Of a stretch of 64,000 nucleotides of DNA, positions 2,849 through 57,579 are shown one piece after another. The notes beneath the pieces are model-generated. The model was not told where the DNA came from. It did no database searches and saw nothing but the letters and a program-made list of their open reading frames with translations. The stretch is taken from IMG/VR virus record IMGVR_UViG_3300037110_000087, positions 243,125-307,124 of that record. One strand, 5' to 3'. Both the position numbers and the translations under genes were made by a program. Within the stretch, counting starts at the first letter, position 1, and each line of letters opens with the position of its first letter.

Positions 2849-4894
2849 TTATTCACTCTCGTTGATCGCGGCGAACAAGGCTCCCTTAGCGATGGTATTA
2901 AGGGGATCATCAGCCATGACAATCTTGTTGCCGGTCAAGAAGGAAATCTCCCTGGTAGCAGCGATCTTCTGAAATAGTTCCTTGAATCCCTTGGGAATCG
3001 CAGTACCACCAGCGATAGCGATCACAGGGGTATCAATCTCAGGCTTCTCTTCCATCCCATTCCAGGCAGCCGCGATCTGATCAAGCACGTAACCAATGAG
3101 ATGCGTGTAATAGTGGACAACCGCTTCCTGAACGTTGTCCTTGGGGTTCAGGAGATCCGTAGTTTCCTTAGCGCTCATAGCTTTGAGGACGCTCACATTT
3201 ACGGCTCTGGCAACATTTTCATCAATGTAGTCACCGGAGGCCGCGATACTGAAGGATAGCTTTGGCATTTCTTTGCCGAAGACCGCACCACTGACATTCA
3301 TCATACCCGCACCGCAGTTATGGACGCAGACACCAGGAAGAGAAAACGAAGGGTCATTCTCAACTGATAAATCATATACCCATCCGGTGTATTCTTCTTG
3401 CTTTACAGACTTGATCTTATTAAGTCTGTAACCACCAATTCTCTTATGTAGCTCTGAACCAATCGGACTGTCCAGAAGTGACTGAAGCATCCGTTTATTC
3501 GATCCGGTTACAACTACCTCATATACGGTCTTTTTTCCAGAGATCTGTCTTCCCCTGATTAATCCATCATTCCTCGGTTTTCTAGATTTAAATCTAGAAC
3601 TAATTCCCAGGATTCCCAAGGCTTGATGTAAGAAGACCGACAGATCAGAACTAGTGTTGGAAAACGAAATGGTTTCTTGCCCAAAACATCCATCGCTGTT
3701 CAACAGACCATTAACAATCCCAGTAAGAACAGGCAGACTGAGACTTTCGACCTTAAATGGAACCACTTTATTGCCACTATGATAGCAGTGGTTCAAAAGC
3801 CAGCGTGAAAGACCCGCGTAACCCATAGTCAGTCGGATATTATTCCTGTTTCCTCTACTGATCTGAGAAATTTCTCTATCGAAAACAGAACAAGACATCT
3901 TGTAATCTTCCACAAGATCTTGTTCATTTGGACCAAGATCAAGAATTACTGAAGTTTCCCTGGTATCGATATGCCCATCACCAAGGAAATATCCAAGAAA
4001 TTTGCCCAGATTGTAAGACATTTCGAATGTCTTATTGAACTGCTTCCCATTACCAATTCTATCTTTAAAACTGATGAAATTCCTTTTCTGATTGTGATTG
4101 ATTACTGGTTCGCCCACGACATCATCTTTTTTCAGGGAATCCACTCTTTTCCATTTCCAGGACCCACCTTCCAGGACATCTACAAGATGATCTCCAGTCA
4201 GACAAAGTTCTCTACCAGCAATCTTTAGTTTGTAGATTAACTCAGACCGTCCGGTTCTTGTGGTCTTATACACCTGATTCCAAGAACCATTTTTGCTAAG
4301 AACCAAGTCCCCTTCCTCAATGTCCTCAATGTCCTTAACGCCCCCATTGCAGAAGACTTCCTGACCAGGAAGAAGGCAGCTGATGCCAATGCCGGTTAGG
4401 TTCTCATCCAGTAGTTCACTATAGATGACGCAAAGACCCTCACGGAGCGCTACCGGTCTGTAACCAAGCTCAGTAAGCATTTTCTTGAAGACCGCTTCAT
4501 GATAGACCGCATTGAATTCCGCATCCACCGGGTTAGCAGGGACACTGAAATAAAGCAGTTCATTCGGTTCCGCAGGATCACCCAGGACCTGTTTGATGAT
4601 AGCTAGCATGATAGGGGTAGCATTCGGGTCATGAGGATTCAATACGCCCTTAGCCATGGGCCGCTTTGGAGACTGATTAAACGCCTTGGCCAACTGCATG
4701 GCCTCTTCACCCAGGGCGTAAATCTTTCCGTTCATCTGAACGTAAGGAACACCAGCCTTCTTGAGCATACTTAGCACGAGTGGATTTCTATCCAATTCCA
4801 CATACATATTACGAACACGGTTGAAGATGTATTCGTCGTCTTTCATGATTGCCCCGACGACACCGCCGGTACCAATGTCAAGACCCTTTGCCAT
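2849..4894 (-). CDS. actin-fold ATPase (MreB/FtsA/ParM-like) containing an intein
   Basis: N-terminal GLDIGTG (phosphate 1), FSVPA, GIGIS|CGAGMMNV after splicing (phosphate 2), IAGGTAIPKGF (adenosine), DPLNTIAKGAL; 327 aa after intein removal. Confidence 0.85.
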   Translation of the reverse strand: MAKGLDIGTGGVVGAIMKDDEYIFNRVRNMYVELDRNPLVLSMLKKAGVPYVQMNGKIYALGEEAMQLAKAFNQSPKRPMAKGVLNPHDPNATPIMLAIIKQVLGDPAEPNELLYFSVPANPVDAEFNAVYHEAVFKKMLTELGYRPVALREGLCVIYSELLDENLTGIGISCLLPGQEVFCNGGVKDIEDIEEGDLVLSKNGSWNQVYKTTRTGRSELIYKLKIAGRELCLTGDHLVDVLEGGSWKWKRVDSLKKDDVVGEPVINHNQKRNFISFKDRIGNGKQFNKTFEMSYNLGKFLGYFLGDGHIDTRETSVILDLGPNEQDLVEDYKMSCSVFDREISQISRGNRNNIRLTMGYAGLSRWLLNHCYHSGNKVVPFKVESLSLPVLTGIVNGLLNSDGCFGQETISFSNTSSDLSVFLHQALGILGISSRFKSRKPRNDGLIRGRQISGKKTVYEVVVTGSNKRMLQSLLDSPIGSELHKRIGGYRLNKIKSVKQEEYTGWVYDLSVENDPSFSLPGVCVHNCGAGMMNVSGAVFGKEMPKLSFSIAASGDYIDENVARAVNVSVLKAMSAKETTDLLNPKDNVQEAVVHYYTHLIGYVLDQIAAAWNGMEEKPEIDTPVIAIAGGTAIPKGFKELFQKIAATREISFLTGNKIVMADDPLNTIAKGALFAAINESE
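3317..4378 (-). mobile_element. intein (354 aa) with LAGLIDADG homing endonuclease
   Basis: Starts CLLPGQEV (Cys1); block B LTGDH; LGYFLGDG and GLLNSDG LAGLIDADG motifs; VYDLSVENDPSF...VHN end followed by Cys+1. Confidence 0.93.
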
Positions 4895-6915: not shown

Positions 6916-8421
6916 CTATCGTGTGATATACCTTGGCAAAAAGCTGACTAAATTAGTGAAGAAATTGTCCGGAATTCTTGGATTAGTTACTTCTGGCCGA
7001 ACACCATATTCCTCGATATTATGTCCGGTAAAAATCCTCGCCTTGGACGTAGGGAGTACGCTTCGTAGAGCATGCAGAAGGTCATCCCCTGTTACCCCAA
7101 AGAATTTTTGTGCAGCCAAACTCCGATCCTTCCAGGTCTTGGCAAATTCTTCAAACTCAGGGTTGTCCACTCGATACATGACCGTGTTCACCAGTTCCAT
7201 TTCGAGCGGAGATAGGACCGCTTCCAGGCTGACAAACAAGGCGGATTCCTGAAGTCGTTCATCGTTCACTTCCAGATTCATCGATTTGGAAGGATCAATA
7301 TCCGGGTTGTCCAGCATGGGCAGTTCAGTGACTTCATGGGAAGTGACTTCCCCCTTACCTCTGCTCTTTCCATTGCCGCAATTCATGCAGAAGACGACAC
7401 CTTCATCATCTTCGCGAGAAATTTCCTGACCTGCCTCATTATACCTGATAGTGACGGTCGGTCTGCGCCTTCCAAAACCAGTTCCGTCACAGGCAGGACA
7501 GATGACCGACCTCGATTCCTGCCGCTTGTGACCATTTTCATATTCAACAGCCACGTGATGCATCTGGCTTTTCATGTTGTTCTGCGCCAGCTTCATAGAT
7601 TCGATAGGATCTTCACGATGACTGGTCTTGAGGATGGCTACCCAGGCTTTCTCAGACAGGACATGGGTCAGGACTTCAGTATCCTCGTAGACGTCCCTCA
7701 GACATTTGAAGATCGGTTTCATCACGATCCGCTTGGCGTATTTGAAAATCATGGGATATAATTCCCTGTACCGCTCCATTTCGTCAATCACGATACCGTC
7801 GCGCCAGCTTTCTTCGCATTCAGCTGGGCCAAACTGAGGGACCACCCGCTGCAAATACCACTCGTGCAGCTGTTTCAATTCAGCCCGGTCCACTTCAAAT
7901 TTCTGCGCTGCGAAGGTATAGGAGTTCTCCCACTCTTTGGGAGTGAGGGTCTTTTCTCTCCATACTTCCGACAAGACACGATTGGTGGAGTCATCCTCTT
8001 CATCAGGGATGATATCCACGGTAGTATCCACGGTGACTCGATTAACGATCCGATTCTGATAAATCACATTGAAGAGAGCGCGACTCATCCGAGTCCAGGA
8101 TACATCGAATTTGCAAGCATCCTTAAAAAGTCGATATTCGTCATACCACACATCTGCAGCGATCTTACCAGATTCCAAGATATTCTGGTTATCTCCTTTG
8201 ACCTTCTCGCAGTCCTGGTGCGTGACCTTCCCACTGCCATGCCGCAGGAGGCTATGGGAGATGGCCCGATCAAGGAGAACGACGAAAATGCGGTTGTTCT
8301 TCAACAGCACTTCTGATTCATTCATGAATTTCTTGATGCCGCTCAGAATGGTGTAGCCTCTTCCAGGCTTCGAAGGAACAAAGCGCTGAGGAACGTCAAG
8401 GTTGAAGAGTTGATTTCTCAT
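6916..8421 (-). CDS. large hypothetical protein with DnaJ-type zinc finger
   Basis: CPACDGTG and CMNCGNG CxxCxGxG-like pair. Confidence 0.75.
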   Translation of the reverse strand: MRNQLFNLDVPQRFVPSKPGRGYTILSGIKKFMNESEVLLKNNRIFVVLLDRAISHSLLRHGSGKVTHQDCEKVKGDNQNILESGKIAADVWYDEYRLFKDACKFDVSWTRMSRALFNVIYQNRIVNRVTVDTTVDIIPDEEDDSTNRVLSEVWREKTLTPKEWENSYTFAAQKFEVDRAELKQLHEWYLQRVVPQFGPAECEESWRDGIVIDEMERYRELYPMIFKYAKRIVMKPIFKCLRDVYEDTEVLTHVLSEKAWVAILKTSHREDPIESMKLAQNNMKSQMHHVAVEYENGHKRQESRSVICPACDGTGFGRRRPTVTIRYNEAGQEISREDDEGVVFCMNCGNGKSRGKGEVTSHEVTELPMLDNPDIDPSKSMNLEVNDERLQESALFVSLEAVLSPLEMELVNTVMYRVDNPEFEEFAKTWKDRSLAAQKFFGVTGDDLLHALRSVLPTSKARIFTGHNIEEYGVRPEVTNPRIPDNFFTNLVSFLPRYITR

Positions 8422-8430
8422 GATCCCTCG

Positions 8431-9036
8431 TTAAGTTTTGGATTGTGGTCCAAATAGTTCGTACAGGCTTTTCTTGATCTGCTTGTCGACAATCCTCAAA
8501 CCCTCCAATTTGACTCGCCAAGCTGTCAAAATCTCGTGGCAGTAATCTTCGGTATCAGAACCTTGAGTCTTGGCAATCGTTCGCCAGTCAATATCCTCGC
8601 GTAACTCTACCTCAACGAACCGTCCCAATGTATTTCCAAACTTGTCTAACACAGTGTACCATGCAAGAACCACAGACGCAAGATAGTAGATGTGACTGAT
8701 CTTACTGATATTCATCACTTCTACGAAATTAAGCATCTCAAACATTTCTTTGACTTCTGTCGGAGAGGGATTTTTCAGTCTGATATTTATTTCTTTGCGG
8801 ACCTCATTACCATGAATCTTCTTCTTAGTAGTCAATTCACCAAAATGACTACTAAATCGATGACGGATGGTATCTCCATCAGCATTACGGTAATAAATAT
8901 CTACACCAGATCCCATCTGGTAAGATCCCTTACCAGAAGCGCCTAATTCATCAAAACGACGCAGTGACATTTCAATGTCAGAGCTAACAGTGAATTTAAC
9001 CTCCCTCTCCCGAAGCTCCACGCTGTTTAGATCCAT
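8431..9036 (-). CDS. CYTH (triphosphate tunnel) domain protein
   Basis: EREVKF, DIYY, IRHR, ELTTK, RKEINI, KISHIY, FVEVE motif series. Confidence 0.8.
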   Translation of the reverse strand: MDLNSVELREREVKFTVSSDIEMSLRRFDELGASGKGSYQMGSGVDIYYRNADGDTIRHRFSSHFGELTTKKKIHGNEVRKEINIRLKNPSPTEVKEMFEMLNFVEVMNISKISHIYYLASVVLAWYTVLDKFGNTLGRFVEVELREDIDWRTIAKTQGSDTEDYCHEILTAWRVKLEGLRIVDKQIKKSLYELFGPQSKT

Positions 9037-10013
9037 TTCTGCTCCAATGCTCTCATAGCCTTCATCTTCTTCCTTTCCAGAAAAACTTCAGAGGGCAGAT
9101 AAACCCATCTTAAGATTGAATCAACTCTCTGAGTTGCGATGTAGTAGAAATCTTTGTCCTTCTTCTTATGAATTATTGGATGAAGGGGCAGCAGTTCAAC
9201 AATTTGTTCAATAAATCCAAGAGATGCTGATCCGAAACTAAACGTCCATCTGCCTTTACTCTCCGAGATACACCCATCCCCCTCAATGCAACCCCGGATG
9301 AAATCTCTCTGATATTGTTCTGGTATTTTATCCAGAACTATTTTCAAGCCAGAGGTCTTCCGGGGTACAATCCCATAAGATCGCAGGCTATCATTTAGAT
9401 GATCGGAATAGACGCACCAGCTAGTGGTTTTGAGACGCTCGTTTGATCTACAGGTCCCACCAATGAAGCTATGAAACGATTCAGTGATCTCTTTGTCCTT
9501 AATATTCAGGGAAAGCGTAACCCCACGTTGACCCCTTCGAGTTCCTTTGTCTCTGACACATCCGTCTGTGGCCATCCATCCCAAGGCCCATGCTTTTTCA
9601 GCGCAGTCGATTATATCAAACCAATACTCGTTAACTGGATTTTTCTCTTTTGCCAACTCACTTATAGATTTAATAGGCATCTTTAGTTCATTCAGCCTGT
9701 TTGTGATTGCAATCTGGCTGATACCAATGGTATTGGATATACCCTTTATGCTCTGACCTTTACTATAGAGATCAGAGATCAGATTACTTTGACGACTAAT
9801 TTCCTCAATTCTTTGCTCTGACCTTGACTGGACACCCGCCTTCTTTACGTGGCCCGCTACTGTCTGGCTAGACACACCAAATTCCCGTCCCAGGATGCTC
9901 GGTGATTCCCCATTCACATATCTTTCGACGATTTGGTTAATCTGATCTTTTGATAGCACAATCACACTCCCTGAATTCAGTTTATCACCGAGTCCAAGGA
10001 GTGTGTTTTGCAT
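9027..10013 (-). mobile_element. free-standing LAGLIDADG homing endonuclease with N-terminal HTH repeats
   Basis: AWALGWMATDGC and FIRGCIEGDGCI motifs; IDCAEKA lead-in. Confidence 0.88.
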
Positions 10014-10049
10014 CGTTTAATGCCTCGAATATACAATAACCATCAATGA

Positions 10050-10442
10050 TTAGACACAGCTTTTGGTGTTACCTATGGTCATATGGAAACACTTTTCAAA
10101 CCCGACAGGGGGAAGGGTATAAGGGCTACTCACCGGTAACCCAAGTTCTCTCCTTATTTCTTCCAGTCGTACGCAAAAGATATTCAGCCACCAATATCGG
10201 GAGTCATTCTGAACATCGATGTCGTAAAAGAACCTAATCCGTTCGCCTTCATATTTCCCCCACAATTCCATTCTCGGGGAAGTCTCTTTTCGGACGACTG
10301 AGATATGAGGAGGATATCGTTGCAAATTAATTCTATGCCACTTGGGAATCAGCGACCGGTAGAATAGAGAGATCCCAGGATCTACCTGCACGACCAATTT
10401 GTTATCTCCATAATGGAGAGTCCCAATGGATTCGAAGAGCAT
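10050..10442 (-). CDS. 2H phosphoesterase (T4 57B/Acb1-like fold candidate)
   Basis: Two HxS/T motifs: PHISVV and FHMTIG. Confidence 0.7.
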   Translation of the reverse strand: MLFESIGTLHYGDNKLVVQVDPGISLFYRSLIPKWHRINLQRYPPHISVVRKETSPRMELWGKYEGERIRFFYDIDVQNDSRYWWLNIFCVRLEEIRRELGLPVSSPYTLPPVGFEKCFHMTIGNTKSCV

Positions 10443-10452
10443 TTCTCTCTTT

Positions 10453-10788
10453 CTAAGATTGATAAGCTACGGTTGTATCACCACAAGGAGGTAAAAGGGC
10501 ATATCTGTTATTCTCCAGTAGGAGAAACTGATACCCTTCCTCAGCATCACCATACTGAGCATCGACTGCAGGAACACTGGTTTCAAGAGCTTCAGCCAGC
10601 TGTTCTGCAACCATGGAAGGGACATCATCGATATCCACCCAAACAGCATTATGGAATGGGTGACTCTCGGGGAAGGTGTTGTCTAAAGAGATTTCGTCTA
10701 GGATAGAGTCGCTGAGTTTGATAGCCATGTCCTCTCCTAAGTTCAAAATTATAACAACAGATGACTTTATACAATTGGAGGGCAGCAA
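10453..10788 (-). CDS. hypothetical acidic protein (true start likely MAIKLS)
   Basis: ORF with GGAG RBS before the internal Met. Confidence 0.6.
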   Translation of the reverse strand: MLPSNCIKSSVVIILNLGEDMAIKLSDSILDEISLDNTFPESHPFHNAVWVDIDDVPSMVAEQLAEALETSVPAVDAQYGDAEEGYQFLLLENNRYALLPPCGDTTVAYQS

Positions 10789-10815
10789 TGCCCTCCAATT
10801 CCCTGATCTATCCTT

Positions 10816-11250
10816 TTAGTGCAGGTTCAGGAAAGTACCAATGCAGAGCCAAGCAAGACCATTCCACTTGAACTTAATAACATCCATGGCATTCGCGGTT
10901 GCGGTGAGAGTAGGAGCGGTTCCACCAGTGAACTTCGCACCAACCCAGGTAACGAGTCTTGAACCAACGACATCCTGAGTGAGTTCAAAGGCCAGATCAT
11001 CTTCAGAAATGGAATCAGTGGGAAGAGTAATCTGGATGTTGGCATCCAGAGTCATCTTGACATAATGACCCAGGCTAAGCGCAGGGAGCTGAGCAACATT
11101 GACACCACCTAGAGCATCAATGGTACCAGTGGTAGCAATTGCAGTGAAAACTACTTCATTCTGCTGGGTAGCAGCGTTGAAGATTGTGGTGCTGGTGTAA
11201 CCCTCAGGATTAATGGGCTGCTGGGTTACCTGTGTCTGTAAATCGGACAT
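10816..11250 (-). CDS. putative virion/tail-associated protein, paralog of 11315..12019
   Basis: LGHYVKMTL...FELTQD..GS...W...KF.GG.AP.LT..ANA.D.I.FKWNG shared with neighbour. Confidence 0.65.
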   Translation of the reverse strand: MSDLQTQVTQQPINPEGYTSTTIFNAATQQNEVVFTAIATTGTIDALGGVNVAQLPALSLGHYVKMTLDANIQITLPTDSISEDDLAFELTQDVVGSRLVTWVGAKFTGGTAPTLTATANAMDVIKFKWNGLAWLCIGTFLNLH

Positions 11251-11314: not shown

Positions 11315-12019
11315 TTAGGTCACGGTTAAGATAGCTGCAGAACTAACAAGGGAACCCATGTAGTTAGTAACTGTCACGGTGTAGGACGATCCTGACATCA
11401 GCACAGTAGTAGCTGGGGTGGTATAGGTAGCAGCAGTCGCACCAGGAATAGCGACTCCAGCCAAATTCCACTGGTAAGCAGGCGCGGGATATCCAGCAGC
11501 AGTAACGCTAAAGGTGTGAGTCGCGGGATGAACAACTGCTGCGGAAGCAGGCTGTACGGAAATTGTAGGAACCATATCAACCAGGATCAGGTTCTTCATC
11601 ACTTCTAGGCACAACCAACTGGTGCCATTCCACTTGAATCTAATCAAGTCCACTGCATTCGCTGCCACGGTGAGAACTGGAGCGGCTCCACCAGGGAATT
11701 TGACAGTGCCAGCCCAAGTAATAACATGAGAACCAGTACCATCCTGCGTCAGTTCGAAGGTCAAATCATCAGAATTAGTGGAACCAGCTGGGAGAGTAAC
11801 AGTCACACTCGCTGTCAGAGTCATCTTGACATAATGACCCAGGGCCAATGAGGGATGCTGAGCAACACTAACACCACCCAGAGGATCAATAGTGCCAGTC
11901 ATAGACTGCTGGGTAAAAATCACTTTATTGGTCTGAGTAGATGGATCAAATATAGTGGTCTGAACGTAACCCTGTGGGTTAATGGGATCCTGAGTGACTA
12001 CTTCTTTAAGATCTGACAT
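11315..12019 (-). CDS. putative virion protein with C-terminal Ig-like domain
   Basis: PTISVQP...TFSVTAAG.PAPAYQW...IPGAT..TYT...YTVTVTN Ig pattern. Confidence 0.75.
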   Translation of the reverse strand: MSDLKEVVTQDPINPQGYVQTTIFDPSTQTNKVIFTQQSMTGTIDPLGGVSVAQHPSLALGHYVKMTLTASVTVTLPAGSTNSDDLTFELTQDGTGSHVITWAGTVKFPGGAAPVLTVAANAVDLIRFKWNGTSWLCLEVMKNLILVDMVPTISVQPASAAVVHPATHTFSVTAAGYPAPAYQWNLAGVAIPGATAATYTTPATTVLMSGSSYTVTVTNYMGSLVSSAAILTVT

Positions 12020-12070: not shown

Positions 12071-12820
12071 CTAGTTTGTTTTTCTGAGTTCTTTCAGGGA
12101 AGTCTCAAAACGGTCAGCGAAGACCTTGGCCCTATTCAGAACATCGATGGCATAAGCACTACTACCGATGGTATTTCCCCAGTTGTAGTGACCCAGTGCG
12201 TCTTTGATTGCCGCGAGATCATCTAAACCCAGTTCCTTCGCTGCATCCCTAAGATCAGCGAATTCATTCAGGCCGACGATGGCATTTGTGACTGGCTCCC
12301 GCAGATGCTCCCTTGAATATCCACCGAAGAAGAAATTCATATAAGAACGGGCATAGGCTGGCATCGTTTGAAACCAGCCTACCGCTCCTGTTGGGCTATC
12401 CTTGATAGCTGGGTTGAACCTGCTCTCTACCTCTGCGATGGCACAGGCCAAGGGGAGAGGAATATTTCTGGCTTCACAGGTTCGGAAGATGGCATCAGTG
12501 GCCCTGCACTGAGTTTCTGCTGGAAGGGTTGGGGCCTTCTCACGAATAATCTTGAGCAGGACCGCAGGTTCATTCATGACCTGGATGTTTTTCATCAATA
12601 GTTCAATATTTGATCCCTGCTTGTTCATCACCCCTGAGTAATCATGGAGTGTATGAATGACCTTGGTTGCGAACCACACTCCCACACCAATTGTACAAAC
12701 CAAAAAGAATGTCTGTGCCAAGGACATACGCTTAAAGAAGACTGATGCGGTTTTGATTTCATTTCCAATTTCTTTTCGGACATCCTGCTGGAAGGTATCC
12801 AATACTTCCTTGATTCCCAT
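12071..12820 (-). CDS. membrane-anchored lytic transglycosylase (SLT)
   Basis: AIAEVESRFNP (catalytic Glu), GAVGWFQTMP, ALGHYNWG; N-terminal TM helix. Confidence 0.88.
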   Translation of the reverse strand: MGIKEVLDTFQQDVRKEIGNEIKTASVFFKRMSLAQTFFLVCTIGVGVWFATKVIHTLHDYSGVMNKQGSNIELLMKNIQVMNEPAVLLKIIREKAPTLPAETQCRATDAIFRTCEARNIPLPLACAIAEVESRFNPAIKDSPTGAVGWFQTMPAYARSYMNFFFGGYSREHLREPVTNAIVGLNEFADLRDAAKELGLDDLAAIKDALGHYNWGNTIGSSAYAIDVLNRAKVFADRFETSLKELRKTN

Positions 12821-20387: not shown

Positions 20388-21236
20388 ATGAAAGTTTATT
20401 GGCACTTGAGTGACAAAATTGGTAGCATGACTCCAAAATGGTTGAATACTTTCCGTGAGGAGCTTGATGTCACTGGAGAGCAGCAGGGATTCATTGGTGA
20501 TCACTCTCTCCTGCCTTTGGATTTTGAACCTGAGGTGGTGATTTCATTAGGTGGTGATGGGACCATGCTTAGTGCCATGCGTAGGACCTATCATATGCAC
20601 ATTCCCTATTTTGGAATCAACTTTGGTGGGATGGGATTTCTTAGCCCTCATGATCCTAATCAGCATGCAATGTATGCAAGTGGTCTTAAAGAATATATCG
20701 CTTCACCTAAAGTAATTGGGCAAATGGACCATACAAAGATGATCAAGGAGGTCTTCCAGGGGTCTTACTGTCGTCTTGATACCAAGGATACTTTCCCCCC
20801 TTTCTTCAATGACTGCGTGATTACTAATGAAAATCGTGGTCAGGCTTGCCGTTTCGGATTGAAGATTGATGGGTCTGATTTTGGGACCATCACCGGGGAT
20901 GGCTTGATTATTTCGACTCCAATGGGGTCCACTGCTTATTCATTGAGCGCTGGAGCTTCAATCTGTGATCCTTCACTATCGGCAATTATTATAACCCCTA
21001 TCTGTCCTCATTCCCTTAGTTTCCGTCCTTTATTCGTGAGTAATGATCGAGGAGTGGAGATTTTAATTAAGAGTGATGGATTTATGTATCTTGATGGTCG
21101 GAAGGAAACTCCCGTGTATTCTGGACAGATTCTTAAAATAGGATCCGCCACTATCCCAGTGAGAATTCTTAAGTTTGGTGAACCCCATCTCTATTTCAAT
21201 ACTCTCCATTCCAAACTTGGCTGGGTTGTTGGATAA
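20388..21236 (+). CDS. nadK: NAD kinase
   Basis: SLGGDGTML, GINFGGMGFL, ND, GDGLIISTPMGSTAYSLSAG, TPICPHSL. Confidence 0.93.
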   Translation: MKVYWHLSDKIGSMTPKWLNTFREELDVTGEQQGFIGDHSLLPLDFEPEVVISLGGDGTMLSAMRRTYHMHIPYFGINFGGMGFLSPHDPNQHAMYASGLKEYIASPKVIGQMDHTKMIKEVFQGSYCRLDTKDTFPPFFNDCVITNENRGQACRFGLKIDGSDFGTITGDGLIISTPMGSTAYSLSAGASICDPSLSAIIITPICPHSLSFRPLFVSNDRGVEILIKSDGFMYLDGRKETPVYSGQILKIGSATIPVRILKFGEPHLYFNTLHSKLGWVVG

Positions 21237-21421
21237 TGCCTTTATTTGATTATGAATGTGGATGCGGTCACCGGACAGAAGTGTTGGTTCCTTCTCCGGA
21301 TGTTAAAGAGATTGAGTGTCCTCTATGTCAATGTATCGCACGACAGAAGTTTCCAATAAGTACACCGATTTTTGTCGGTGATGGTTGGTTTAAAGATGGA
21401 TATGCCAAGAAGGGGAAGTAA
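21236..21421 (+). CDS. FmdB-family zinc-ribbon protein
   Basis: MPLFDYECGCGH...CPLC...F.GDGWFK.GY. Confidence 0.8.
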   Translation: MPLFDYECGCGHRTEVLVPSPDVKEIECPLCQCIARQKFPISTPIFVGDGWFKDGYAKKGK

Positions 21422-22599
21422 TGTTGGGAGTACAGAAATACCTGCGTTGTGGAAAGACCATCGAGAACCTCTGTGCTGAATTCAGTATCAAGGCTAGAGT
21501 TGATCCAGCACTTGGTGTAGTCAGCCTAAATTATGACCAAATCAATTCTGTGATGAGCCTTCAGATTGTCCAGGAATGTCGCGCTCTGATTCTTGAGCTT
21601 GATACCTGGGAAGTTCTATCCTGGCCTTTCAAGAAGTTCTTTAACTATGGTGAGGGTCATATTCCAGAGGATTTCGATTGGGGCAGCTTCTCTACTCTGG
21701 AAAAGCTCGATGGCTCCCTAATTTCTCTGTGGTTCAAGAAAGTGAGTGATACACCTGGACCTCTTTATCAGGCTTATTTTTCTACCAGAAGCGTTCCAGA
21801 TGCAAACTGCGGTTACGATGAAAGTGGTGATACCTTTTTGAGTTTGATCAAGAAGACCATCGTCGAAATGGAAGCCAAGTATGGAAATTATAAGGGAGAG
21901 TTCCTCAATCATTTCATGACAGGTTATTCCTATGCATTTGAATTGACTACTCCAGAAAATCAGATCGTCGTTCAGCACAATGAACGCTGCTTGACCCTCA
22001 TTGGAGTGAGGGATCTTGAAACTCTAGAAGAAGTAGACATCTATGAATGGGCTAGGGATACCTACCCATATCCAGTCGTAAAGGGTGTCATGGGACTTAA
22101 TTTAGAGGCAGTGAAGCAAAAGGTGAGTGAAATCAATCCTCTTGATGAAGAAGGATATGTGCTCATCGACGAGAATTTCAATCGAATCAAGATCAAGAGC
22201 GATGCTTATCTCCTGCTGTCTCGTTCACGTGACAACCTGGGTAAATCCGCTCGTGCCCGGTTGGAAATTATCTTAATAGATAAAATGGATGATGTCTGGC
22301 CGATCCAGCCCAAATGGATTCAAGAAAAATTAACCAGCATGAAAGAGGCTATCCGAACTCTAGCTCTTTATATCGATCTTCAGTATGTGCAGGTTTGTGA
22401 TATTGAAGGCCAGAAAGATTTTGCTCTGGAGATCAAGGGTTTACCCTACAAGGATGCTTTGTTCCAGCTGAGGAGCAAGAAGGTGGAATCCGCGATAGAC
22501 TGGGTGAGAAACTATGGACTCAAGAATTCCCGTAAACTTCTTGATTTGTTGAAAATTGTAGTGGAGGATCTTGATGACCAAGAGTCTGAAGAGAGTTAG
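21421..22599 (+). CDS. T4 Rnl1-like RNA ligase
   Basis: CRALIL, WPFKKFFN, EKLDGS (motif I), FEL..PEN.IV, EGYV, RIKIK. Confidence 0.9.
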   Translation: MLGVQKYLRCGKTIENLCAEFSIKARVDPALGVVSLNYDQINSVMSLQIVQECRALILELDTWEVLSWPFKKFFNYGEGHIPEDFDWGSFSTLEKLDGSLISLWFKKVSDTPGPLYQAYFSTRSVPDANCGYDESGDTFLSLIKKTIVEMEAKYGNYKGEFLNHFMTGYSYAFELTTPENQIVVQHNERCLTLIGVRDLETLEEVDIYEWARDTYPYPVVKGVMGLNLEAVKQKVSEINPLDEEGYVLIDENFNRIKIKSDAYLLLSRSRDNLGKSARARLEIILIDKMDDVWPIQPKWIQEKLTSMKEAIRTLALYIDLQYVQVCDIEGQKDFALEIKGLPYKDALFQLRSKKVESAIDWVRNYGLKNSRKLLDLLKIVVEDLDDQESEES

Positions 22600-22677
22600 C
22601 GCACCCGTACCCGTAGAAATGGAAACTGACCGGGTGATCACAGAGATTATTTGCAGGATGGTAATTAAGGGAAAGAA

Positions 22678-23193
22678 ATGAGGACTAGCGATAGTCATCC
22701 TATTGAGGTTAGTTGGCTCCCCTACCTTAATATAGGTTTGACTTTTTGTCCGGGTAAGAAACAAACAAATTCTATGACCGGTGGTTGGGATCGTGATATT
22801 GATAAGGACCTTGACCGATTGAAGGGTTATTATGGAGTAGACCGTATCATTTGTCTGATGGAATCTGAGGAGTTGGAAGAATATGGGATCCCAAACTATT
22901 TTGCAAAAATTGAAGAACACGGTATGCATTGGATTCACCTCCCTTTTCCTAATGACACCTGCCCTCCAGATGCAAGTGCGTTTGTTAGTATTGGCAGGTA
23001 TTTAAATCTTGAAAAGATAACGACTGTCATTCATTGTAAAGGTGGTATTGGTCGGACAGCAATGTTAGCGGCAGTCTGTTTATCGTTCAATAAACACATC
23101 TGTATTGAAAAAGCTCTAGAGGAAATTTCTGAAATAAGACAGGTCATTCTAACGCCAGAACAGCGTAAATGGATGTTGAATAATTTTATGTAA
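22678..23193 (+). CDS. Cys-based (CDKN3/dual-specificity-like) phosphatase
   Basis: IHCKGGIGRT CX5R motif. Confidence 0.88.
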   Translation: MRTSDSHPIEVSWLPYLNIGLTFCPGKKQTNSMTGGWDRDIDKDLDRLKGYYGVDRIICLMESEELEEYGIPNYFAKIEEHGMHWIHLPFPNDTCPPDASAFVSIGRYLNLEKITTVIHCKGGIGRTAMLAAVCLSFNKHICIEKALEEISEIRQVILTPEQRKWMLNNFM

Positions 23194-23239
23194 ACAGGGA
23201 TCCAGGGAGGATCTTTGCGGAATCGACCATGGAGGTCAA

Positions 23240-24343
23240 ATGTACAAAGCTATCGTTTATATTGGAAGATTTCAACCACTCCACAATGAACATTTGCAAA
23301 CTATGAAAGAAGGTCTGCAACTGGCGGAGAATCTGGTAATTGTGTTAGGTTCTTCCTATTGTCCCAGGAACGATTATAATCCATGGAACGAAGATGAACG
23401 TGAAACAATGATCATGGGCAGTCTCTCAAAGGAAGATCGATCAAGAATCTTTTTCATTAAGGCCAGGGATACCAAATACAATGACTCTCTGTGGGTTAAC
23501 ACAATTCACAGTGAATTGACTAAGATCCTGGCCGAACAAGAAATAAAAGATTCGAAATTCCCAACTATTCGATATCCAGCCTATGAGGGCCTTCCCGCTC
23601 AAGGAGTTGCTATCATTGGTTACGCGAAAGATAGCAGTTCTTATTATCTCCATATGTTCCCACAGTGGGACTTCATTGAACGTGTTGATCAAAAAACCAA
23701 ATGCTTCAGCGCTTCGGAGTGTCGGAAGAAATATTTTGTGGACTTAAGGGATAAAGAAGTCGCTGGGTCTGCGATCTCGGAGTTGCTGAATGTTCCCCAA
23801 CATGTAGGAGACTTCCTGGGATTTTGGAAGAACACAGACGCGTATAATTACGTGGTCAAGGAGCTTGAATTCCAGCAGAAATATACGGAACAATGGGAGA
23901 AGGCACCTTATAAGCCGATTTTCGTCACCACGGATGCGGTTGTGATTAAGAGCTTTCATGTCTTGATGGTAAGGCGCAAGAACAACCCAGGGAAGGGACT
24001 CTTAGCTCTTCCCGGTGGATTCCTTGATGCCACTGAAACCATTGTTGATTCAACCATCAGAGAAGTCAGGGAAGAGACCACTATTCAAATCAGTGCGGAG
24101 CAACTGAAAACCTACGTGAAGCAAACTAAGGAATTTGCTCATCCCTTCCGATCTAGACGGGGAAGGACCATCACGTTTGCTTCTTTGATTGCATTAGGCA
24201 ATGGTGTGTTACCCAGTGTGAGGGGTCGTGATGATGCAGCTGAGGCTCTGTGGATTCCTCTGAGTGAGATCCATGATCTCCGTTCTCAGATGTTTGAAGA
24301 TCATTATGACATCATCTGTAATCTTGTAGGAATCATGGAGTAA
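23240..24343 (+). CDS. bifunctional NMN adenylyltransferase / ADP-ribose pyrophosphatase (NadM-Nudix)
   Basis: YIGRFQPLHNEH; Nudix box PGGFLD..E......REVREET; GRDDA. Confidence 0.93.
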   Translation: MYKAIVYIGRFQPLHNEHLQTMKEGLQLAENLVIVLGSSYCPRNDYNPWNEDERETMIMGSLSKEDRSRIFFIKARDTKYNDSLWVNTIHSELTKILAEQEIKDSKFPTIRYPAYEGLPAQGVAIIGYAKDSSSYYLHMFPQWDFIERVDQKTKCFSASECRKKYFVDLRDKEVAGSAISELLNVPQHVGDFLGFWKNTDAYNYVVKELEFQQKYTEQWEKAPYKPIFVTTDAVVIKSFHVLMVRRKNNPGKGLLALPGGFLDATETIVDSTIREVREETTIQISAEQLKTYVKQTKEFAHPFRSRRGRTITFASLIALGNGVLPSVRGRDDAAEALWIPLSEIHDLRSQMFEDHYDIICNLVGIME

Positions 24344-24486
24344 CTATGGACAACAAACTGAGCTTTGAGGAATGGTGGGAACAGCTTCAGAAAGAGGTCT
24401 ATGCCGACATAGACCCAAAAGAATTGGCTCGTGACGCCTTTGAAGCTGGCTCAAGTTATTGTTACTACAATATCAACAGGTGAAAT

Positions 24487-24885
24487 ATGAAAGAAATTTC
24501 AAGATCTGCAACAGGTCGTTTTCCCTCTGATATTCCTAATCAGAGCAATGTACCCAAGACAGACGAAGGACAGACCTTTCTCAGTTCGTTCAAAGCTGGC
24601 TATCCAGAGGTAAGACTTTCTTTCGAAAACTTGGAAGAGCGTGTCATCCGGACCCTTAGTATTCCTGTCGAGCAGATTGATCGTAATAACAATTGGTTCT
24701 CTCAGGAAGCCTTTGAGAAGGCTATGATCCCACTTGAGGACAGTAATTATATCTTCCCAGTTACTGACAAAGACGGAGTTGTTACATTTCATGAATTCCA
24801 GGGTGTAACATTCACCCATTGCCGTACCACTTTTACTGACTCTCATAGAGTCTCGCCAGAAACCATTCAAGAGGAGAAATCTTGA
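24487..24885 (+). CDS. hypothetical protein
   Basis: ORF in plus run. Confidence 0.55.
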   Translation: MKEISRSATGRFPSDIPNQSNVPKTDEGQTFLSSFKAGYPEVRLSFENLEERVIRTLSIPVEQIDRNNNWFSQEAFEKAMIPLEDSNYIFPVTDKDGVVTFHEFQGVTFTHCRTTFTDSHRVSPETIQEEKS

Positions 24886-25199
24886 AACCAACTACTAAGG
24901 CCACCAACCCAGCCACCACATCCGTTAAGGAGAAAGCGGCTACTGCTACTCTGCTCGATGTAGCTCCGTTCAAGGGGGTTATTGACACTTTTGCGAAAGC
25001 CGGGAATTCCTCCTTCGCGATCCTGATCCCCGCCACGTGGTTCATGGAATTGGATGGGGTCAAGGGGGTGAAACTCAATCGCGAAGCTGCCTACCTGGGC
25101 ACCTTGTTTAACAAGGATGTCTATGACACCGATCTGAATCAGATCGAGATCCGGTATACTCGTCCGGATGGCACCAGAGGCATCGAGGTCTATAAGTGA
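24882..25199 (+). CDS. hypothetical protein
   Basis: AGGAG RBS, TTG start overlapping upstream stop. Confidence 0.65.
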   Translation: MKPTTKATNPATTSVKEKAATATLLDVAPFKGVIDTFAKAGNSSFAILIPATWFMELDGVKGVKLNREAAYLGTLFNKDVYDTDLNQIEIRYTRPDGTRGIEVYK

Positions 25200-25419
25200 C
25201 ATGGGCTTCCTTATTGGCTTCTTCGTCTATGTGATCATGATGAGTGCGGTTATGTTCCCGATTAGAGACATGATTACGGACCCTGTTTCCAAAGACATGG
25301 GTCCGATCAGGTTCCGAATGTATCCACTTTGGGTCTATGTCATCTTCGCACCTGTAGTGCTATTAGCCATAATTTTTAATCTTTTGTGGATGTTGCTCGT
25401 TGTGGAGTTGTGGAAGTGA
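25168..25419 (+). CDS. small membrane protein (true start likely MGFLIG)
   Basis: Two hydrophobic segments. Confidence 0.55.
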   Translation: MAPEASRSISDMGFLIGFFVYVIMMSAVMFPIRDMITDPVSKDMGPIRFRMYPLWVYVIFAPVVLLAIIFNLLWMLLVVELWK

Positions 25420-25685
25420 TTGAAGGTTGGATTTCCCTAGTACTCGCAACAATTTTCATGTTGCGAGTACTAGTTATGTTCCTATTCTACCGCAGATTTA
25501 CAATCCACCTTGCAAGCGGAGAATCAATTAAGATTGTTTGTACTTACTTTGCCCTTTCTTATAATGAGAGCGGGACAGTAACCGGTTGGCAGATGTCAAG
25601 AAAAGATAATGGGAAGACGTTGATTTATGCAAATCCTGCTCTCATTATCGCTGTCACTGACGAACTTCCTTATATTTGGGACTAA
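25386..25685 (+). CDS. membrane-anchored hypothetical protein
   Basis: One TM segment then a beta-rich domain. Confidence 0.55.
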   Translation: MDVARCGVVEVIEGWISLVLATIFMLRVLVMFLFYRRFTIHLASGESIKIVCTYFALSYNESGTVTGWQMSRKDNGKTLIYANPALIIAVTDELPYIWD

Positions 25686-25750
25686 GAGGGTTATAATAAA
25701 AGTAGACTCAGGGAGAGTCTACAACTAAATCGATCCAGGGAGGATCACAA

Positions 25751-27127
25751 ATGTCAAATCTTTCTAATTCAATTATCGATGTCGACTCATACAAGTTAAG
25801 CCATTTCAACATGTATCCGGATGAGACTCAAAAGGTCTACAGCTATTTCGAATGTAGAAATGGTGCGACCTATTCGAACCAGAAATTCTTCGGCCTTCAG
25901 TATCTCCTCAGGACCCAGTTGGTGAACCCGGTTACTCAGGAAGATCTAGAGGAAGCCTACGAGATCAGCAAGGAGCAGGGTTTGCCTCTCAACTATGCTG
26001 GTTGGCAGTACATCCTTGATGTCCATGATGGGATGTTGCCTCTTCATATCAAGGCTATCCCCGAGGGAATGGTCCTGCCAGTGTCCAATGCATTAATTAC
26101 CATCGAGAACACGGATACTAACCTACCCTGGCTCACCAATTATGTGGAGACTATGTTGTCCCGTATTTGGTACCCTATCACTATCGCGACCATGAGTCAT
26201 GAGGCGAAGAAGGTTATCAGTTACTTCAACGAGCAGACTGCTGACAATCCCGGTCTGGTCCCATTCCAACTGCATGACTTCGGTTCTCGTGGAGTAACCT
26301 GCCCTGAACAGGCTGCAATTGGAGGAATGGCTCACCTCACAAACTTTTATGGCACTGACACAGTTATTGCTCACCTGATGGTTAAAAAGATATATGGGTC
26401 TAAAAACCCTATTAGTTTTTCCGTGAACGCGACTGAACATAGTATCCAGACTTCCAAGGGCCGAGGAGGTGAGAAACAAATATTTGTGGATCTCCTTCAT
26501 AAATATCCAACAGGAATCCTCAGCGTGGTCATTGATTCTTATGACTATCAGAATTTTATTTCCGGTTATGGACTCGAATTTAAGGAAGAAATCCTTGCCC
26601 GAAATGGCAAGCTGGTCTTCCGCCCCGATTCTGGTGACCCAGTTGCCGTGAGTCTCGATGTGATCTCTCGTCTGGATCGGGTCTTCGGCTCTACCATCAA
26701 CACCAAGGGCTACAAAGTTCTTCATCCCCAGGTTGGAATGCTTTGGGGTGATGGCATCGACATCGAGGACATGGAAGTCATTCTGCAGAATCTCAAGAAT
26801 AATGGTTGGTCTTCGGACAATATTGTCTTCGGGATGGGTGGTGGACTGCTTCAGAAGGTCAACCGTGATACCATGCGGTGTGCTTTCAAGTGCAGTGCAC
26901 AGTTGCAGAACGGTAAATGGGTCGATATTTCCAAGGACCCGCTTGACTCGACCAAGAAGTCAAAGAAGGGTCGGCTCAAGGTAATCGAGACTCCCGATGG
27001 GATCATCACTGTCAATCAGAATGACGAGCGATACACCGACAGTGAAGATCTGTTGCAGACGGTGTTCCTCAATGGCGAGATCACGAAGACCTACACTCTG
27101 GATGATATTAGGGAAAGGAACTGGTGA
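25751..27127 (+). CDS. nadV: nicotinamide phosphoribosyltransferase (NAMPT)
   Basis: DVDSYKLSH, LHDFGSRG, ATEHS, SVVIDSYD, VFRPDSGDP, WGDGI, FGMGGGLLQKVNRDT, KKSKKGRL. Confidence 0.95.
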   Translation: MSNLSNSIIDVDSYKLSHFNMYPDETQKVYSYFECRNGATYSNQKFFGLQYLLRTQLVNPVTQEDLEEAYEISKEQGLPLNYAGWQYILDVHDGMLPLHIKAIPEGMVLPVSNALITIENTDTNLPWLTNYVETMLSRIWYPITIATMSHEAKKVISYFNEQTADNPGLVPFQLHDFGSRGVTCPEQAAIGGMAHLTNFYGTDTVIAHLMVKKIYGSKNPISFSVNATEHSIQTSKGRGGEKQIFVDLLHKYPTGILSVVIDSYDYQNFISGYGLEFKEEILARNGKLVFRPDSGDPVAVSLDVISRLDRVFGSTINTKGYKVLHPQVGMLWGDGIDIEDMEVILQNLKNNGWSSDNIVFGMGGGLLQKVNRDTMRCAFKCSAQLQNGKWVDISKDPLDSTKKSKKGRLKVIETPDGIITVNQNDERYTDSEDLLQTVFLNGEITKTYTLDDIRERNW

Positions 27128-54589: not shown

Positions 54590-54960
54590 CTGTTTCCCCA
54601 CACGCTGCAAGACAATCTGTAAAGGTTAATGGTAAAATAAAGATTCATTAAGGGCAAATTTTCATGATCAACTCTCTACCCAAACAATATTGCATGCCAA
54701 ATTCCATTGAATTTGGTCGTGGAATGCTTGTGTAAAGGGTCTTTCTGAATCTTTTTATGGAAAAGGCCCCTCGTCAAACAGGGGCCTCAACATTTCCGAC
54801 CCTGGTTCCTTAGATTAGTCCGCACAAATCGCAGAGCTACGAACTCTGAGAACGCCAGTTGAAATCTGGCAGGAACCACCACTGGAGCAAGTTGGATCAA
54901 ACAACTAGAAGTTAGAATAGATCCAAGGCAACAATCAAGGTTGAAGCCAAACAGAAGGGA

Positions 54961-54989
54961 TTGACAGAAACGAACAGTCAGGTTAAAAT
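54961..54989 (+). promoter_or_regulatory. sigma70-type promoter heading the ncRNA field
   Basis: TTGACA-17-TAAAAT. Confidence 0.8.
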
Positions 54990-55174
54990 AAAAGACAACC
55001 AACGTGATCATGGTCATATTGGGAATCCTTGGAAAATCAATAGCGTAATAAGTTTGTCGGGCGTTTTAGGACGCCTGAATGGTCCCACATCCTACGCGGA
55101 AGTGGGCAAGTCCATCGAGGCTGTATCCTCCTGTCGTGAGATAACGGGGCTAGTGGATTCAACAGCAAATATCA

Positions 55175-55279: not shown

Positions 55280-55291
55280 AAGCAATTCAGC

Positions 55292-55390: not shown

Positions 55391-55511
55391 AGCAACATCG
55401 AGGCTTGGCAATCGCTGAGCCTTAACTCCCTAGGGTAGTCAGGATTCAGTTCCTATCATCTTGTGTTGGAAGGGAGCTAGCAACGTAGAGTACACATAGC
55501 GTTGCAACAAT

Positions 55512-57571: not shown

Positions 57572-57579
57572 GTACAAGT

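What the first reader, a model, noticed from the sequence alone, without database searches (positions are those of the whole stretch)
8431..10442. 2H phosphoesterase and CYTH enzyme pair, separated only by a homing endonuclease
Seen: a 130-aa protein with two HxS/T motifs lies upstream of a CYTH protein, with a LAGLIDADG gene between them. Known: T4 Acb1 (57B) is a 2H phosphoesterase that destroys CBASS cyclic nucleotides; CYTH enzymes include CyaB adenylate cyclase and triphosphatases. Inference: a nucleotide-signal manipulation or anti-defence pair, or RNA-end healing enzymes.
Basis: partly seen in the sequence, partly recalled or inferred. Interest (0 to 1): 0.6.

Follow-up and report, generated by a model that had tools for sequence, protein, structure and literature searches.

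The report
Phage RNA-repair 2H enzyme beside triphosphatase
In a 307-kb jumbo phage from peat, a small two-histidine phosphodiesterase, a homing endonuclease and a tunnel-type triphosphatase lie in a row as described, but the two enzymes are not a conserved pair: the first belongs to a phage family that sits beside tRNA/RNA-repair genes, and the second has the motifs of a hydrolase, not a cyclase, so this is ordinary jumbo-phage content.

Summary
Three tightly packed minus-strand genes encode a 130-aa 2H phosphoesterase (10050-10442), a free-standing HTH-LAGLIDADG homing endonuclease (9027-10013) and a 201-aa CYTH/TTM protein (8431-9036). High-confidence models and fold searches confirm both enzyme folds.

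The "pair" reading is not supported.
- None of 61 viral loci (42 clusters) with the 2H family has a CYTH gene within 10 kb, apart from one marginal match 9 kb away.
- None of 18 CYTH-family loci has the 2H gene.
- At whole-record level, 1 of 16 and 0 of 9 records hold both.

The 2H family is closest to Pfam 2H-SAK and shows no specific likeness to T4 Acb1. Its recurring neighbours are a CCA-adding-type nucleotidyltransferase, a cREC domain protein and RNA ligases. The window itself holds an Rnl1-like ligase and a PTP-SAK phosphatase about 11 kb away. The 2H protein is therefore most likely an RNA 2',3'-cyclic phosphodiesterase used in phage RNA or tRNA repair.

The CYTH protein keeps ExExK, RxR and ExE and lacks the HF motif. 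By published criteria that makes it a triphosphatase, not a CyaB-type cyclase. Its neighbours vary between phages, mostly nucleotide-metabolism genes.

Verdict: a new member of known kinds, of low to moderate interest.

The parts
10050..10442 (-). 130-aa stand-alone 2H phosphoesterase (HxS at 46-48, HxT at 120-122). It belongs to a jumbo-phage family (phrog_12204) nearest to Pfam 2H-SAK. Predicted RNA 2',3'-cyclic phosphodiesterase.
   Evidence: ORF. phrog_12204 E 1.1e-17. 201 homologues. Invariant H46 and H120. Model pLDDT 94. Only 2H folds at the top of the structure searches. 38 of 59 family members match PF22547. The query itself scores 16.5 bits, below the cut-off of 27.
9027..10013 (-). 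328-aa free-standing homing endonuclease: two N-terminal HTH domains plus a double-motif LAGLIDADG core. Single copy in the genome.
   Evidence: LAGLIDADG_3 and HTH_7 in Pfam. phrog_4645 1.6e-38. About 25% identity over 93% of its length to the endonucleases of Staphylococcus phage K-like phages, one record calling it intron-encoded. No paralogue in the 307-kb genome. No intron RNA found. Its stop overlaps the CYTH start by 10 nt.
8431..9036 (-). 201-aa CYTH / triphosphate tunnel metalloenzyme with hydrolase-type motifs (E10xE12xK14, T56xR58xR60, E142xE144). Predicted triphosphatase; substrate unknown.
   Evidence: PF01928 above its cut-off. 139 relatives in the exhaustive search. Invariant K14, D46, R58, R60, K71, R80, E82, K112, Y127, E142, E144. 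Model pLDDT 95.9. TTM fold, Z 16. The family profile's best solved relative is SaTTM, E 2.4e-12. Motif rules come from PMC8233210.
21421..22599 (+). T4 Rnl1-like RNA ligase, the likely sealing partner of the 2H end-healing step. It lies about 11 kb from the 2H gene, so the partnership is inferred, not adjacent.
   Evidence: PF09511 RNA_lig_T4_1, E 6.9e-12, 46.1 bits against a cut-off of 28.3. Found through phmmer with the L081 ligase.
22678..23193 (+). DSP/PTP-type phosphatase matching Pfam PTP-SAK, next to the RNA ligase. Likely removes the 2'/3' phosphate from RNA ends (inferred).
   Evidence: PF22784 PTP-SAK 27.2 bits against 27; CDKN3 and Y_phosphatase above their cut-offs.

Best explanation
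The three genes are neighbours in a densely packed late or structural-side gene block of a 307-kb jumbo phage, not one system.

(1) The 130-aa protein is a minimal but catalytically complete 2H phosphoesterase. It most likely opens RNA 2',3'-cyclic phosphate ends left by host metal-independent RNases such as anticodon nucleases and toxins. The ends can then be dephosphorylated, extended by the CCA-adding-type enzyme and sealed by the phage's own ligases.

(2) The 201-aa CYTH protein is a two-metal triphosphate tunnel hydrolase that cleaves a triphosphate-bearing substrate (PPPi, NTP/dNTP or another). It is not a cyclic-nucleotide synthase and acts independently of the 2H enzyme.

(3) The LAGLIDADG gene is a selfish free-standing homing endonuclease that happens to sit in the intergenic gap.

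Shown: the folds, the motifs, the family relations and the neighbourhood statistics. Inferred: the substrates and the repair pathway.
For: Folds and motifs.

Family affinity of the 2H protein: 38 of 59 homologues match PF22547 2H-SAK and 4 match 2_5_RNA_ligase2. The Atlas neighbours are viral clusters carrying 2H-SAK.

Neighbourhoods of the 2H family.
- In 17 of 61 IMG/VR loci (9 of 42 clusters at 90% identity) a PolyA_pol-head nucleotidyltransferase lies within 10 kb. In 8 of those 9 clusters it is upstream, on the same strand and within 5 kb.
- In 10 loci (4 clusters) a cREC_REC gene lies upstream on the same strand: directly upstream in 7 loci (3 clusters), about 1 kb upstream in the other 3.
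- In L020 the three genes abut: 8349-9698, 9643-10014, 9980-10402.
- In phages CBB and Munch the homologue lies 2.5 kb from an RNA ligase and 3 kb from a tRNA nucleotidyltransferase and a Nudix gene.

Own genome: Rnl1-like ligase and PTP-SAK phosphatase at window 21421-23193; an Rnl2-type ligase; a CCA-type nucleotidyltransferase; an AAA_33 kinase 2 kb from that transferase.

Literature: 2H and cRec are proposed to clear 2',3'-cyclic ends in jumbo-phage RNA repair (PMC7824862; PMC9503650).

No pairing.

CYTH is a hydrolase: no HF before ExExK, both Arg of xRxR kept, ExE kept, judged by the rules of PMC8233210. The best solved relative, SaTTM, is a triphosphatase that makes no cyclic nucleotide. 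cyaB TIGR00318 scores 34 bits against a cut-off of 58.
Against: - In this genome the 2H gene is not next to any repair gene. The ligase and phosphatase are about 11 kb away on the other strand, and the nucleotidyltransferase and kinase are 43-46 kb away.
- No cREC, Tpt1, RtcB or SIR2 gene was found, so the step that would remove a 2'-phosphate is not identified.
- Most 2H-family loci (33 of 42 clusters) show no repair gene within 10 kb.
- The query itself is below Pfam's 2H-SAK cut-off.
- Structure cannot separate RNA-end CPDases from Acb1-type nucleases (Z tied).
- One CYTH relative (L081) lies inside a nucleotidyltransferase-Rnl1-Metallophos cluster, so a link between CYTH and RNA repair is not excluded.
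- No biochemical data exist for either family.
Confidence: 0.6

Rival explanations
1. One reading: 2H and CYTH form a functional pair for nucleotide-signal manipulation or anti-defence, ancestrally adjacent and split only by the endonuclease insertion.
For: The genes are 987 bp apart on one strand with no terminator between them. Both act on phosphorylated nucleotides. Homing endonucleases do insert between neighbouring genes.
Against: - 0 of 61 2H-family loci have a convincing CYTH gene within 10 kb. The one marginal match, in L071, is 9 kb away on the opposite strand.
- 0 of 18 CYTH-family loci have the 2H gene.
- Only 1 of 16 large 2H-bearing records has any CYTH gene, while G000 rang as the positive control.
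- 0 of 9 CYTH-bearing records have the 2H gene.
- The closest 2H relatives (66-69% identity) are followed by unrelated genes.
- The CYTH protein lacks the cyclase motifs.
Confidence: 0.06
2. The 2H protein alone is an Acb1-like counter-defence nuclease that destroys CBASS or type III CRISPR cyclic oligonucleotides, or 2'-5' oligoadenylate-like signals.
For: It is a small phage 2H enzyme of Acb1-like size. VIA gives Z 5.7-5.9 to phage FBB1 Acb1 (7t27, 7t26), among the top matches. BFVD lists Acb1 models at TM 0.43-0.49. In two relatives the gene follows a T4 gp1-type dNMP kinase; in T4, gene 1 lies one gene (57A) away from 57B/Acb1.
Against: The Z scores are tied with LigT, CNPase, ns2 and CPDase. 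hhalign against T4 57B gives a probability of 0.9% and aligns non-equivalent halves. No Pfam, PHROG or PADLOC link to Acb1 was found. The family's recurring neighbours are tRNA and RNA-repair genes, not anti-defence genes.
Confidence: 0.15
3. The 2H protein processes NAD-derived cyclic phosphates (ADP-ribose 1''-2'' cyclic phosphate, cADPR-type signals) as part of the phage's NAD+/ADPr network, rather than RNA ends.
For: The window carries NAD kinase, NMNAT-Nudix and NAMPT genes around the RNA ligase. cREC and Nudix neighbours occur in relatives. The proposal is made in PMC9503650.
Against: The genome has no Tpt1/KptA or SIR2 gene that would make Appr>p. The most frequent neighbour is a CCA-adding-type nucleotidyltransferase, which points to tRNA 3' ends.
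Confidence: 0.12
4. The CYTH protein also belongs to RNA repair, for instance acting on 5'-triphosphate RNA ends or on a by-product, so the neighbourhood with 2H has meaning even though it is rare.
For: In L081 a family member ends an operon-like row: nucleotidyltransferase (3583-4248), Rnl1 (7198-8292), Metallophos (8950-9774), CYTH (9812-10504). Together with the window that makes two independent contexts. Cet1-type TTMs are RNA triphosphatases (Z 11).
Against: Other lineages place it beside thymidylate kinase, an RNase H-fold protein and a sigma factor, beside QueC, Vut_1 and dCMP deaminase, beside GMP reductase, or beside a helicase. The nearest solved relatives are small-molecule triphosphatases, not the Cet1 clade.
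Confidence: 0.1

Closest known systems
Pfam PF22547 2H-SAK ('Swiss Army Knife' RNA-repair 2H domain) / phrog_12204
   Same: Two HxS/T motifs and a length of about 125-140 aa. 38 of 59 family members match the model. phrog_12204 matches at 1.1e-17 over the full length. The viral distribution agrees.
   Different: The window's protein scores 16.5 bits, below the cut-off of 27, and only its C-terminal half aligns. It is a stand-alone protein, not a domain of a multi-domain SAK protein. No member has been assayed.
LigT/ThpR-type RNA 2',3'-cyclic phosphodiesterases (E. coli LigT, T. thermophilus TT0787, P. horikoshii PH0099)
   Same: Same fold and catalytic dyad. Z 6.1 to 1iuh, 5.9 to 1vdx, 4.7 to 5ldo. 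The proposed reaction is the same.
   Different: About 50 residues shorter, 9-15% identity, and no sequence-level match in the PDB.
T4 Acb1 (gene 57B) / phage FBB1 Acb1 anti-CBASS nuclease
   Same: A small phage 2H enzyme. Z 5.7-5.9 over 101-104 residues.
   Different: No specific sequence relation (hhalign probability 0.9%). The gene context differs. Activity on cyclic oligonucleotides is untested.
SaTTM (Saci_0718) and the Pyrococcus PH1819/PH1012 CYTH proteins
   Same: Best solved relatives of the CYTH family (profile E 2.4e-12 to 6.3e-7; TM 0.68-0.70). ExExK, small-x-RxR and ExE motifs as in the triphosphatase SaTTM.
   Different: 19-25% identity. The phage clade has an extra insert after the ExE strand (DIDW... 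region). The substrate is unknown.
Class IV adenylate cyclase CyaB (Yersinia pestis AC-IV, Aeromonas CyaB)
   Same: Same tunnel fold, Z 16.2. Weak TIGR00318 match.
   Different: It lacks the HF motif, keeps the first Arg of xRxR and keeps the second Glu of ExE. All three are against a cyclase by PMC8233210. It scores 34 bits against the cut-off of 58.
HTH-LAGLIDADG endonucleases of Staphylococcus phage K-like phages (phrog_4645; one record annotates it as intron-encoded)
   Same: Full-length similarity (93% coverage, E 1e-15) and the same HTH-plus-LAGLIDADG layout.
   Different: Only about 25% identity. Here it is free-standing between genes, with no intron RNA detected.

Membership tests
2H phosphoesterase superfamily | Two H-x-S/T motifs, one in each half of an internally duplicated fold | tested here: met
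   H46-I-S48 and H120-M-T122. H46 and H120 are invariant and S48 and T122 at least 90% conserved in 59 homologues.
2H phosphoesterase superfamily | 2H fold | tested here: met
   Model pLDDT 94. The top 21-23 matches are all 2H enzymes, Z 3.7-6.1, covering residues 13-130. Unrelated folds reach Z 3.0 at most. Foldseek alone was weak (E 0.16).
Pfam PF22547 2H-SAK | Score at or above the gathering cut-off (27 bits) | tested here: not met
   16.5 bits, E 0.011, C-terminal half only; 13.9 bits in the genome search. However, 38 of 59 homologues match at E < 0.01, best 6.1e-7. It is the nearest family, not a strict member.
Acb1 (anti-CBASS 2H nuclease) | Sequence or profile relation to T4 57B / Acb1 | tested here: not met
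   hhalign probability 0.9%, aligning the first motif to Acb1's second.
Acb1 (anti-CBASS 2H nuclease) | Hydrolysis of cyclic di- or trinucleotide signals | not testable with these tools
   Needs an enzyme assay.
CYTH / triphosphate tunnel metalloenzymes (PF01928) | N-terminal ExExK motif, basic and acidic tunnel residues, eight-stranded tunnel fold | tested here: met
   E10-R-E12-V-K14. Invariant R58, R60, K71, R80, E82, K112, E142, E144. Pfam 25.0 against 23.2 bits. Z 16 to YgiF, AC-IV and PH1012.
Class IV adenylate cyclase (CyaB) | HFxxxxExExK; first Arg of xRxR replaced by a small residue; ExE changed to ExA (PMC8233210) | tested here: not met
   N4-S5 stand in place of HF. R58 and R60 are both present. 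E142 and E144 are both present. TIGR00318 scores 34.1 bits against a cut-off of 57.95.
Thiamine triphosphatase clade | An aromatic residue in W/Y-x-R-x-R | tested here: not met
   T56 occupies that position.
LAGLIDADG homing endonuclease | LAGLIDADG core domain(s) | tested here: met
   PF14528 scores 33.4 against 22.5 bits. Two motifs are read from the sequence, LGWMATDG and IRGCIEGDG. phrog_4645 1.6e-38. Cleavage and mobility were not tested. No endonuclease-free allele was seen in four other runs.
Conserved two-gene system (2H + CYTH) | Adjacency or co-occurrence kept across independent lineages | tested here: not met
   0 of 61 and 0 of 18 loci; 1 of 16 and 0 of 9 records.

The most novel reading that the evidence does not exclude
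The small CYTH triphosphatase is a so far unrecognised accessory of phage RNA-repair modules. It sits next to an end-healing phosphoesterase both here (2H) and in L081 (Metallophos, with Rnl1 and a CCA-type nucleotidyltransferase). It might act on 5'-triphosphate RNA ends or on a triphosphate by-product, and the 2H-CYTH adjacency would then reflect a shared pathway.
Probability: 0.1. Interest if true: 0.5.

Novelty: new member of a known kind. Interest (0 to 1): 0.25.

Why it matters
The finding does not uncover a new anti-defence pair, so the locus can be set aside as a candidate signal-manipulation system.

What remains useful:
- An abundant family of 130-140-aa viral 2H enzymes (201 word-search homologues, phrog_12204), annotated only as hypothetical, can now be tied by gene context to tRNA 3'-end and RNA repair (CCA-adding-type enzyme -> cREC -> 2H operons).
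- Jumbo-phage CYTH proteins of this clade can be annotated as triphosphatases rather than adenylate cyclases.

Both claims can be tested with simple enzyme assays.

Tried and rejected
- Megablast of 8000-11000 against the phage records: no match.
- tblastn of the CYTH protein against the phage records: no match.
- Word search for the CYTH protein: only itself, which is why the exhaustive search was used.
- Sequence searches of the PDB with the 2H profile and the single CYTH sequence: nothing meaningful.
- Foldseek against the PDB for the 2H model: no hit below E 0.001. It was resolved with VIA-align.
- The search for related loci with the single CYTH protein, the 501-aa neighbour and the endonuclease: nothing.
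- Downstream genes of 2H relatives tested as possible CYTH proteins (L001, L006, L007): unrelated.
- 130-aa ORFs near CYTH relatives (L009, L012) tested as possible 2H proteins: unrelated.
- The 501-aa downstream ORF compared with the sigma-like neighbours of CYTH relatives: unrelated.
- PADLOC: no defence-family hit for either enzyme.
- Intron hypothesis for the endonuclease: no Rfam hit.
- Endonuclease-free variant in other metagenomes: contigs from two runs bridge the junction between the endonuclease and the 2H gene, and no joint skips the endonuclease. Coverage is fragmentary.
- No genetic code other than table 11 was needed.
Full report
**Setting.** The window is bases 243125-307124 of a single 307,124-bp IMG/VR virus record that CheckV rates 98% complete. 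It is a jumbo phage. The same sequence occurs in peat, permafrost and freshwater metagenomes. The finding lies in a run of tightly packed minus-strand genes. Upstream are an SLT transglycosylase (12071-12820), two tail-fibre-like proteins (11315-12019, 10816-11250) and a 111-aa ORF. Downstream is a 501-aa ORF with no family match. Gaps between genes are 9-36 nt or overlaps, and no convincing terminator lies inside the block. In a phage packed this densely, adjacency alone is weak evidence of shared function.

**Observation.** All three ORFs exist as described.
- The 130-aa protein has HIS at 46-48 and HMT at 120-122. Among 59 of its 201 homologues both histidines are invariant and the S/T positions are at least 90% conserved.
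- Its AlphaFold2 model is confident (pLDDT 94.1, pTM 0.86).
- Foldseek against the PDB was weak (best hit MHV ns2 PDE, E 0.16).
- The exhaustive VIA-align search put 21 2H enzymes in the first 21 places: CNPase Z 6.0, ns2 5.8, Acb1 5.7, YjcG 5.4, CPDase 5.4, LigT 5.3, Usb1 5.2 and others. Each has 92-114 aligned residues spanning 13-130. Unrelated folds follow at Z 2.9. The re-ranking of Foldseek's own list gave the same picture.
- The absolute Z values are modest. The argument rests on the clean separation from unrelated folds and on the conserved dyad.
- The 201-aa protein passes Pfam's CYTH cut-off, models at pLDDT 95.9 and matches tunnel metalloenzymes strongly.
- The middle gene is an HTH-HTH-LAGLIDADG endonuclease. 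It is distantly but fully alignable with the endonucleases of Staphylococcus phage K-like phages, one record calling it intron-encoded. It is single-copy in this genome and is not inside a detectable intron.

**Is it a pair?** I tested this in both directions and at two scales.
- An HMM of the CYTH family was searched against all ORFs of 61 IMG/VR loci that carry the 2H family with up to 10 kb on each side (42 clusters at 90% identity). It found only the window's own gene and one marginal hit (E 0.005), 9 kb away on the opposite strand in L071.
- The 2H HMM found nothing in 18 loci that carry CYTH-family genes.
- At whole-record level, Pfam CYTH rang in the window's genome (the positive control) and in only 1 of 16 other large 2H-bearing records, 6 of which are at least 90% complete.
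- The 2H profile rang in none of 9 CYTH-bearing records.
- The nearest 2H relatives (66-69% identity) and the 595-kb phage LR756511 have unrelated genes downstream.
- No endonuclease-free allele was visible in four other runs. Two of them have contigs that bridge the junction between the endonuclease and the 2H gene.

The adjacency is therefore specific to this genome as far as the data reach. One caveat: the loci were collected with a few peptide patterns, so they are a biased sample.

**What the 2H protein most likely does.**
- Its family is viral and is found in cultured jumbo phages: Bacillus phage G gp116, Rak2-like phages, Atu_ph07 and Phosso.
- It is nearest to Pfam 2H-SAK, the 2H domain of 'Swiss Army Knife' RNA-repair proteins.
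- Clustering the neighbours of the 61 loci showed three recurring partners. A PolyA_pol-head (CCA-adding-type) nucleotidyltransferase occurs in 17 loci or 9 clusters; in 8 of those clusters it is upstream, on the same strand and within 5 kb. A cREC_REC 'cyclic-phosphate processing receiver' protein occurs in 10 loci or 4 clusters, directly upstream in 7 loci (3 clusters) and about 1 kb upstream in the other 3. An amidoligase occurs in 7 clusters, on the opposite strand.
- In L020 the nucleotidyltransferase, cREC and 2H genes abut or overlap. A single such transferase gene in a 200-500 kb genome would fall within 10 kb of a random gene only a few percent of the time. That estimate is my inference, not a computed baseline.
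- In phages CBB and Munch the homologue lies between an RNA ligase and a tRNA nucleotidyltransferase-Nudix pair.
- Iyer et al. already proposed that jumbo-phage 2H and cRec enzymes clear 2',3'-cyclic phosphate ends for RNA repair (PMC7824862; PMC9503650).
- The window's own genome has the rest of a repair kit, though dispersed: an Rnl1-like ligase and a PTP-SAK phosphatase at window 21421-23193 inside an NAD+-salvage cluster; an Rnl2-type ligase; a CCA-type transferase with an AAA_33 kinase 2 kb away.
- No Tpt1, RtcB, SIR2 or cREC gene was found.

**Acb1.** The Acb1 reading cannot be excluded by structure, because the Z scores are tied. It has no specific support. The profile comparison with T4 57B fails, and none of Pfam, PHROGs or PADLOC links the protein to Acb1. 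One small lead remains. In L005 and L006 the gene follows a T4 gp1-type dNMP kinase; in T4, 57B lies one gene (57A) away from gene 1. This is seen in one lineage only.

**What the CYTH protein most likely does.**
- The exhaustive search found 139 relatives. Eight close ones share 36-45% identity. The rest form a larger family of about 190 aa that is common in phages.
- The family profile's best solved relatives are SaTTM and the Pyrococcus CYTH proteins.
- Vogt et al. showed that SaTTM is a triphosphatase that makes no cyclic nucleotide. They gave three determinants that separate cyclases from hydrolases. The window's protein and its family show the hydrolase state at all three: no HF before ExExK, T-x-R-x-R with both arginines, and ExE intact. 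NCBIfam's cyaB model scores far below its cut-off.
- The neighbours differ by lineage. They are thymidylate kinase, an RNase H-fold protein and a sigma factor in eight syntenic loci; QueC, Vut_1 and dCMP deaminase; GMP reductase; a helicase with a sigma-like protein; and, in L081, a nucleotidyltransferase-Rnl1-Metallophos row.
- This fits the published view of CYTH and MazG triphosphatases as scattered nucleotide-pool enzymes of jumbo phages (PMC7824862). The L081 context keeps a minor RNA-repair option open.

**Verdict.** Both enzymes are new, unassayed members of known superfamilies in a setting already surveyed in the literature. The modest added value is the nucleotidyltransferase-cREC-2H operon evidence for this particular viral 2H family and the motif-based reassignment of the phage CYTH clade to hydrolases.

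Noticed in passing
window 20388-27127 (+): An RNA-repair and NAD+-salvage cluster: NAD kinase (20388-21236), T4 Rnl1-like RNA ligase (21421-22599), PTP-SAK phosphatase (22678-23193), NMN adenylyltransferase-Nudix fusion (23240-24343) and NAMPT (25751-27127).
   Followed up: partly
L020 8349-10402 (also L017, L021, L025, L028, L030, L032): An abutting three-gene row in uncultured phages: PolyA_pol-head nucleotidyltransferase -> cREC_REC -> 2H-family protein. It looks like a tRNA 3'-end repair operon. An amidoligase gene lies 1.3-3.3 kb downstream on the opposite strand in 7 clusters.
   Followed up: partly
L081 3583-10504: A CYTH-family gene closes a row of CCA-type nucleotidyltransferase, Rnl1-like ligase and calcineurin-like phosphoesterase genes. 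This is the only other context that links this CYTH family to RNA repair.
   Followed up: partly
window 6916-8421 (-): A 501-aa ORF directly after the CYTH gene. It has two CxxC pairs (CPACDG ... CMNCGNG). It matches no Pfam, PHROG, NCBIfam or PADLOC family, and no relative was found in IMG/VR.
   Followed up: partly
window 10816-11250 and 11315-12019 (-): Two tail-fibre-like paralogues with similar N-terminal halves. The longer one ends in an Ig-like (Hoc-like) domain.
   Followed up: no
window 54804-63930 (+): Six tRNA genes spread over 9 kb (Arg-ACG, Pro-TGG, Ile-AAT, Cys-GCA, Phe-GAA, Ile-GAT). An AAT anticodon for Ile is unusual for bacteria and phages.
   Followed up: no
window 8147-8342, 9828-9976, 10177-10478: Contigs identical to the window occur in a peat metatranscriptome library (X3), over the 501-aa gene, the endonuclease gene and the 2H gene. 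DNA carry-over cannot be excluded, so this does not show transcription.
   Followed up: no
LR756511.1 (L001 is 263665-272045): The 595-kb uncultured phage has two places that match the 2H family, so possibly paralogues. Only the best place was examined.
   Followed up: no
G000 207125-208759 and 210406-210735 (outside the window): A CCA-adding-type nucleotidyltransferase (545-aa open frame) and an AAA_33 P-loop kinase lie 2 kb apart. This may be a second RNA-repair cluster in the same genome.
   Followed up: partly
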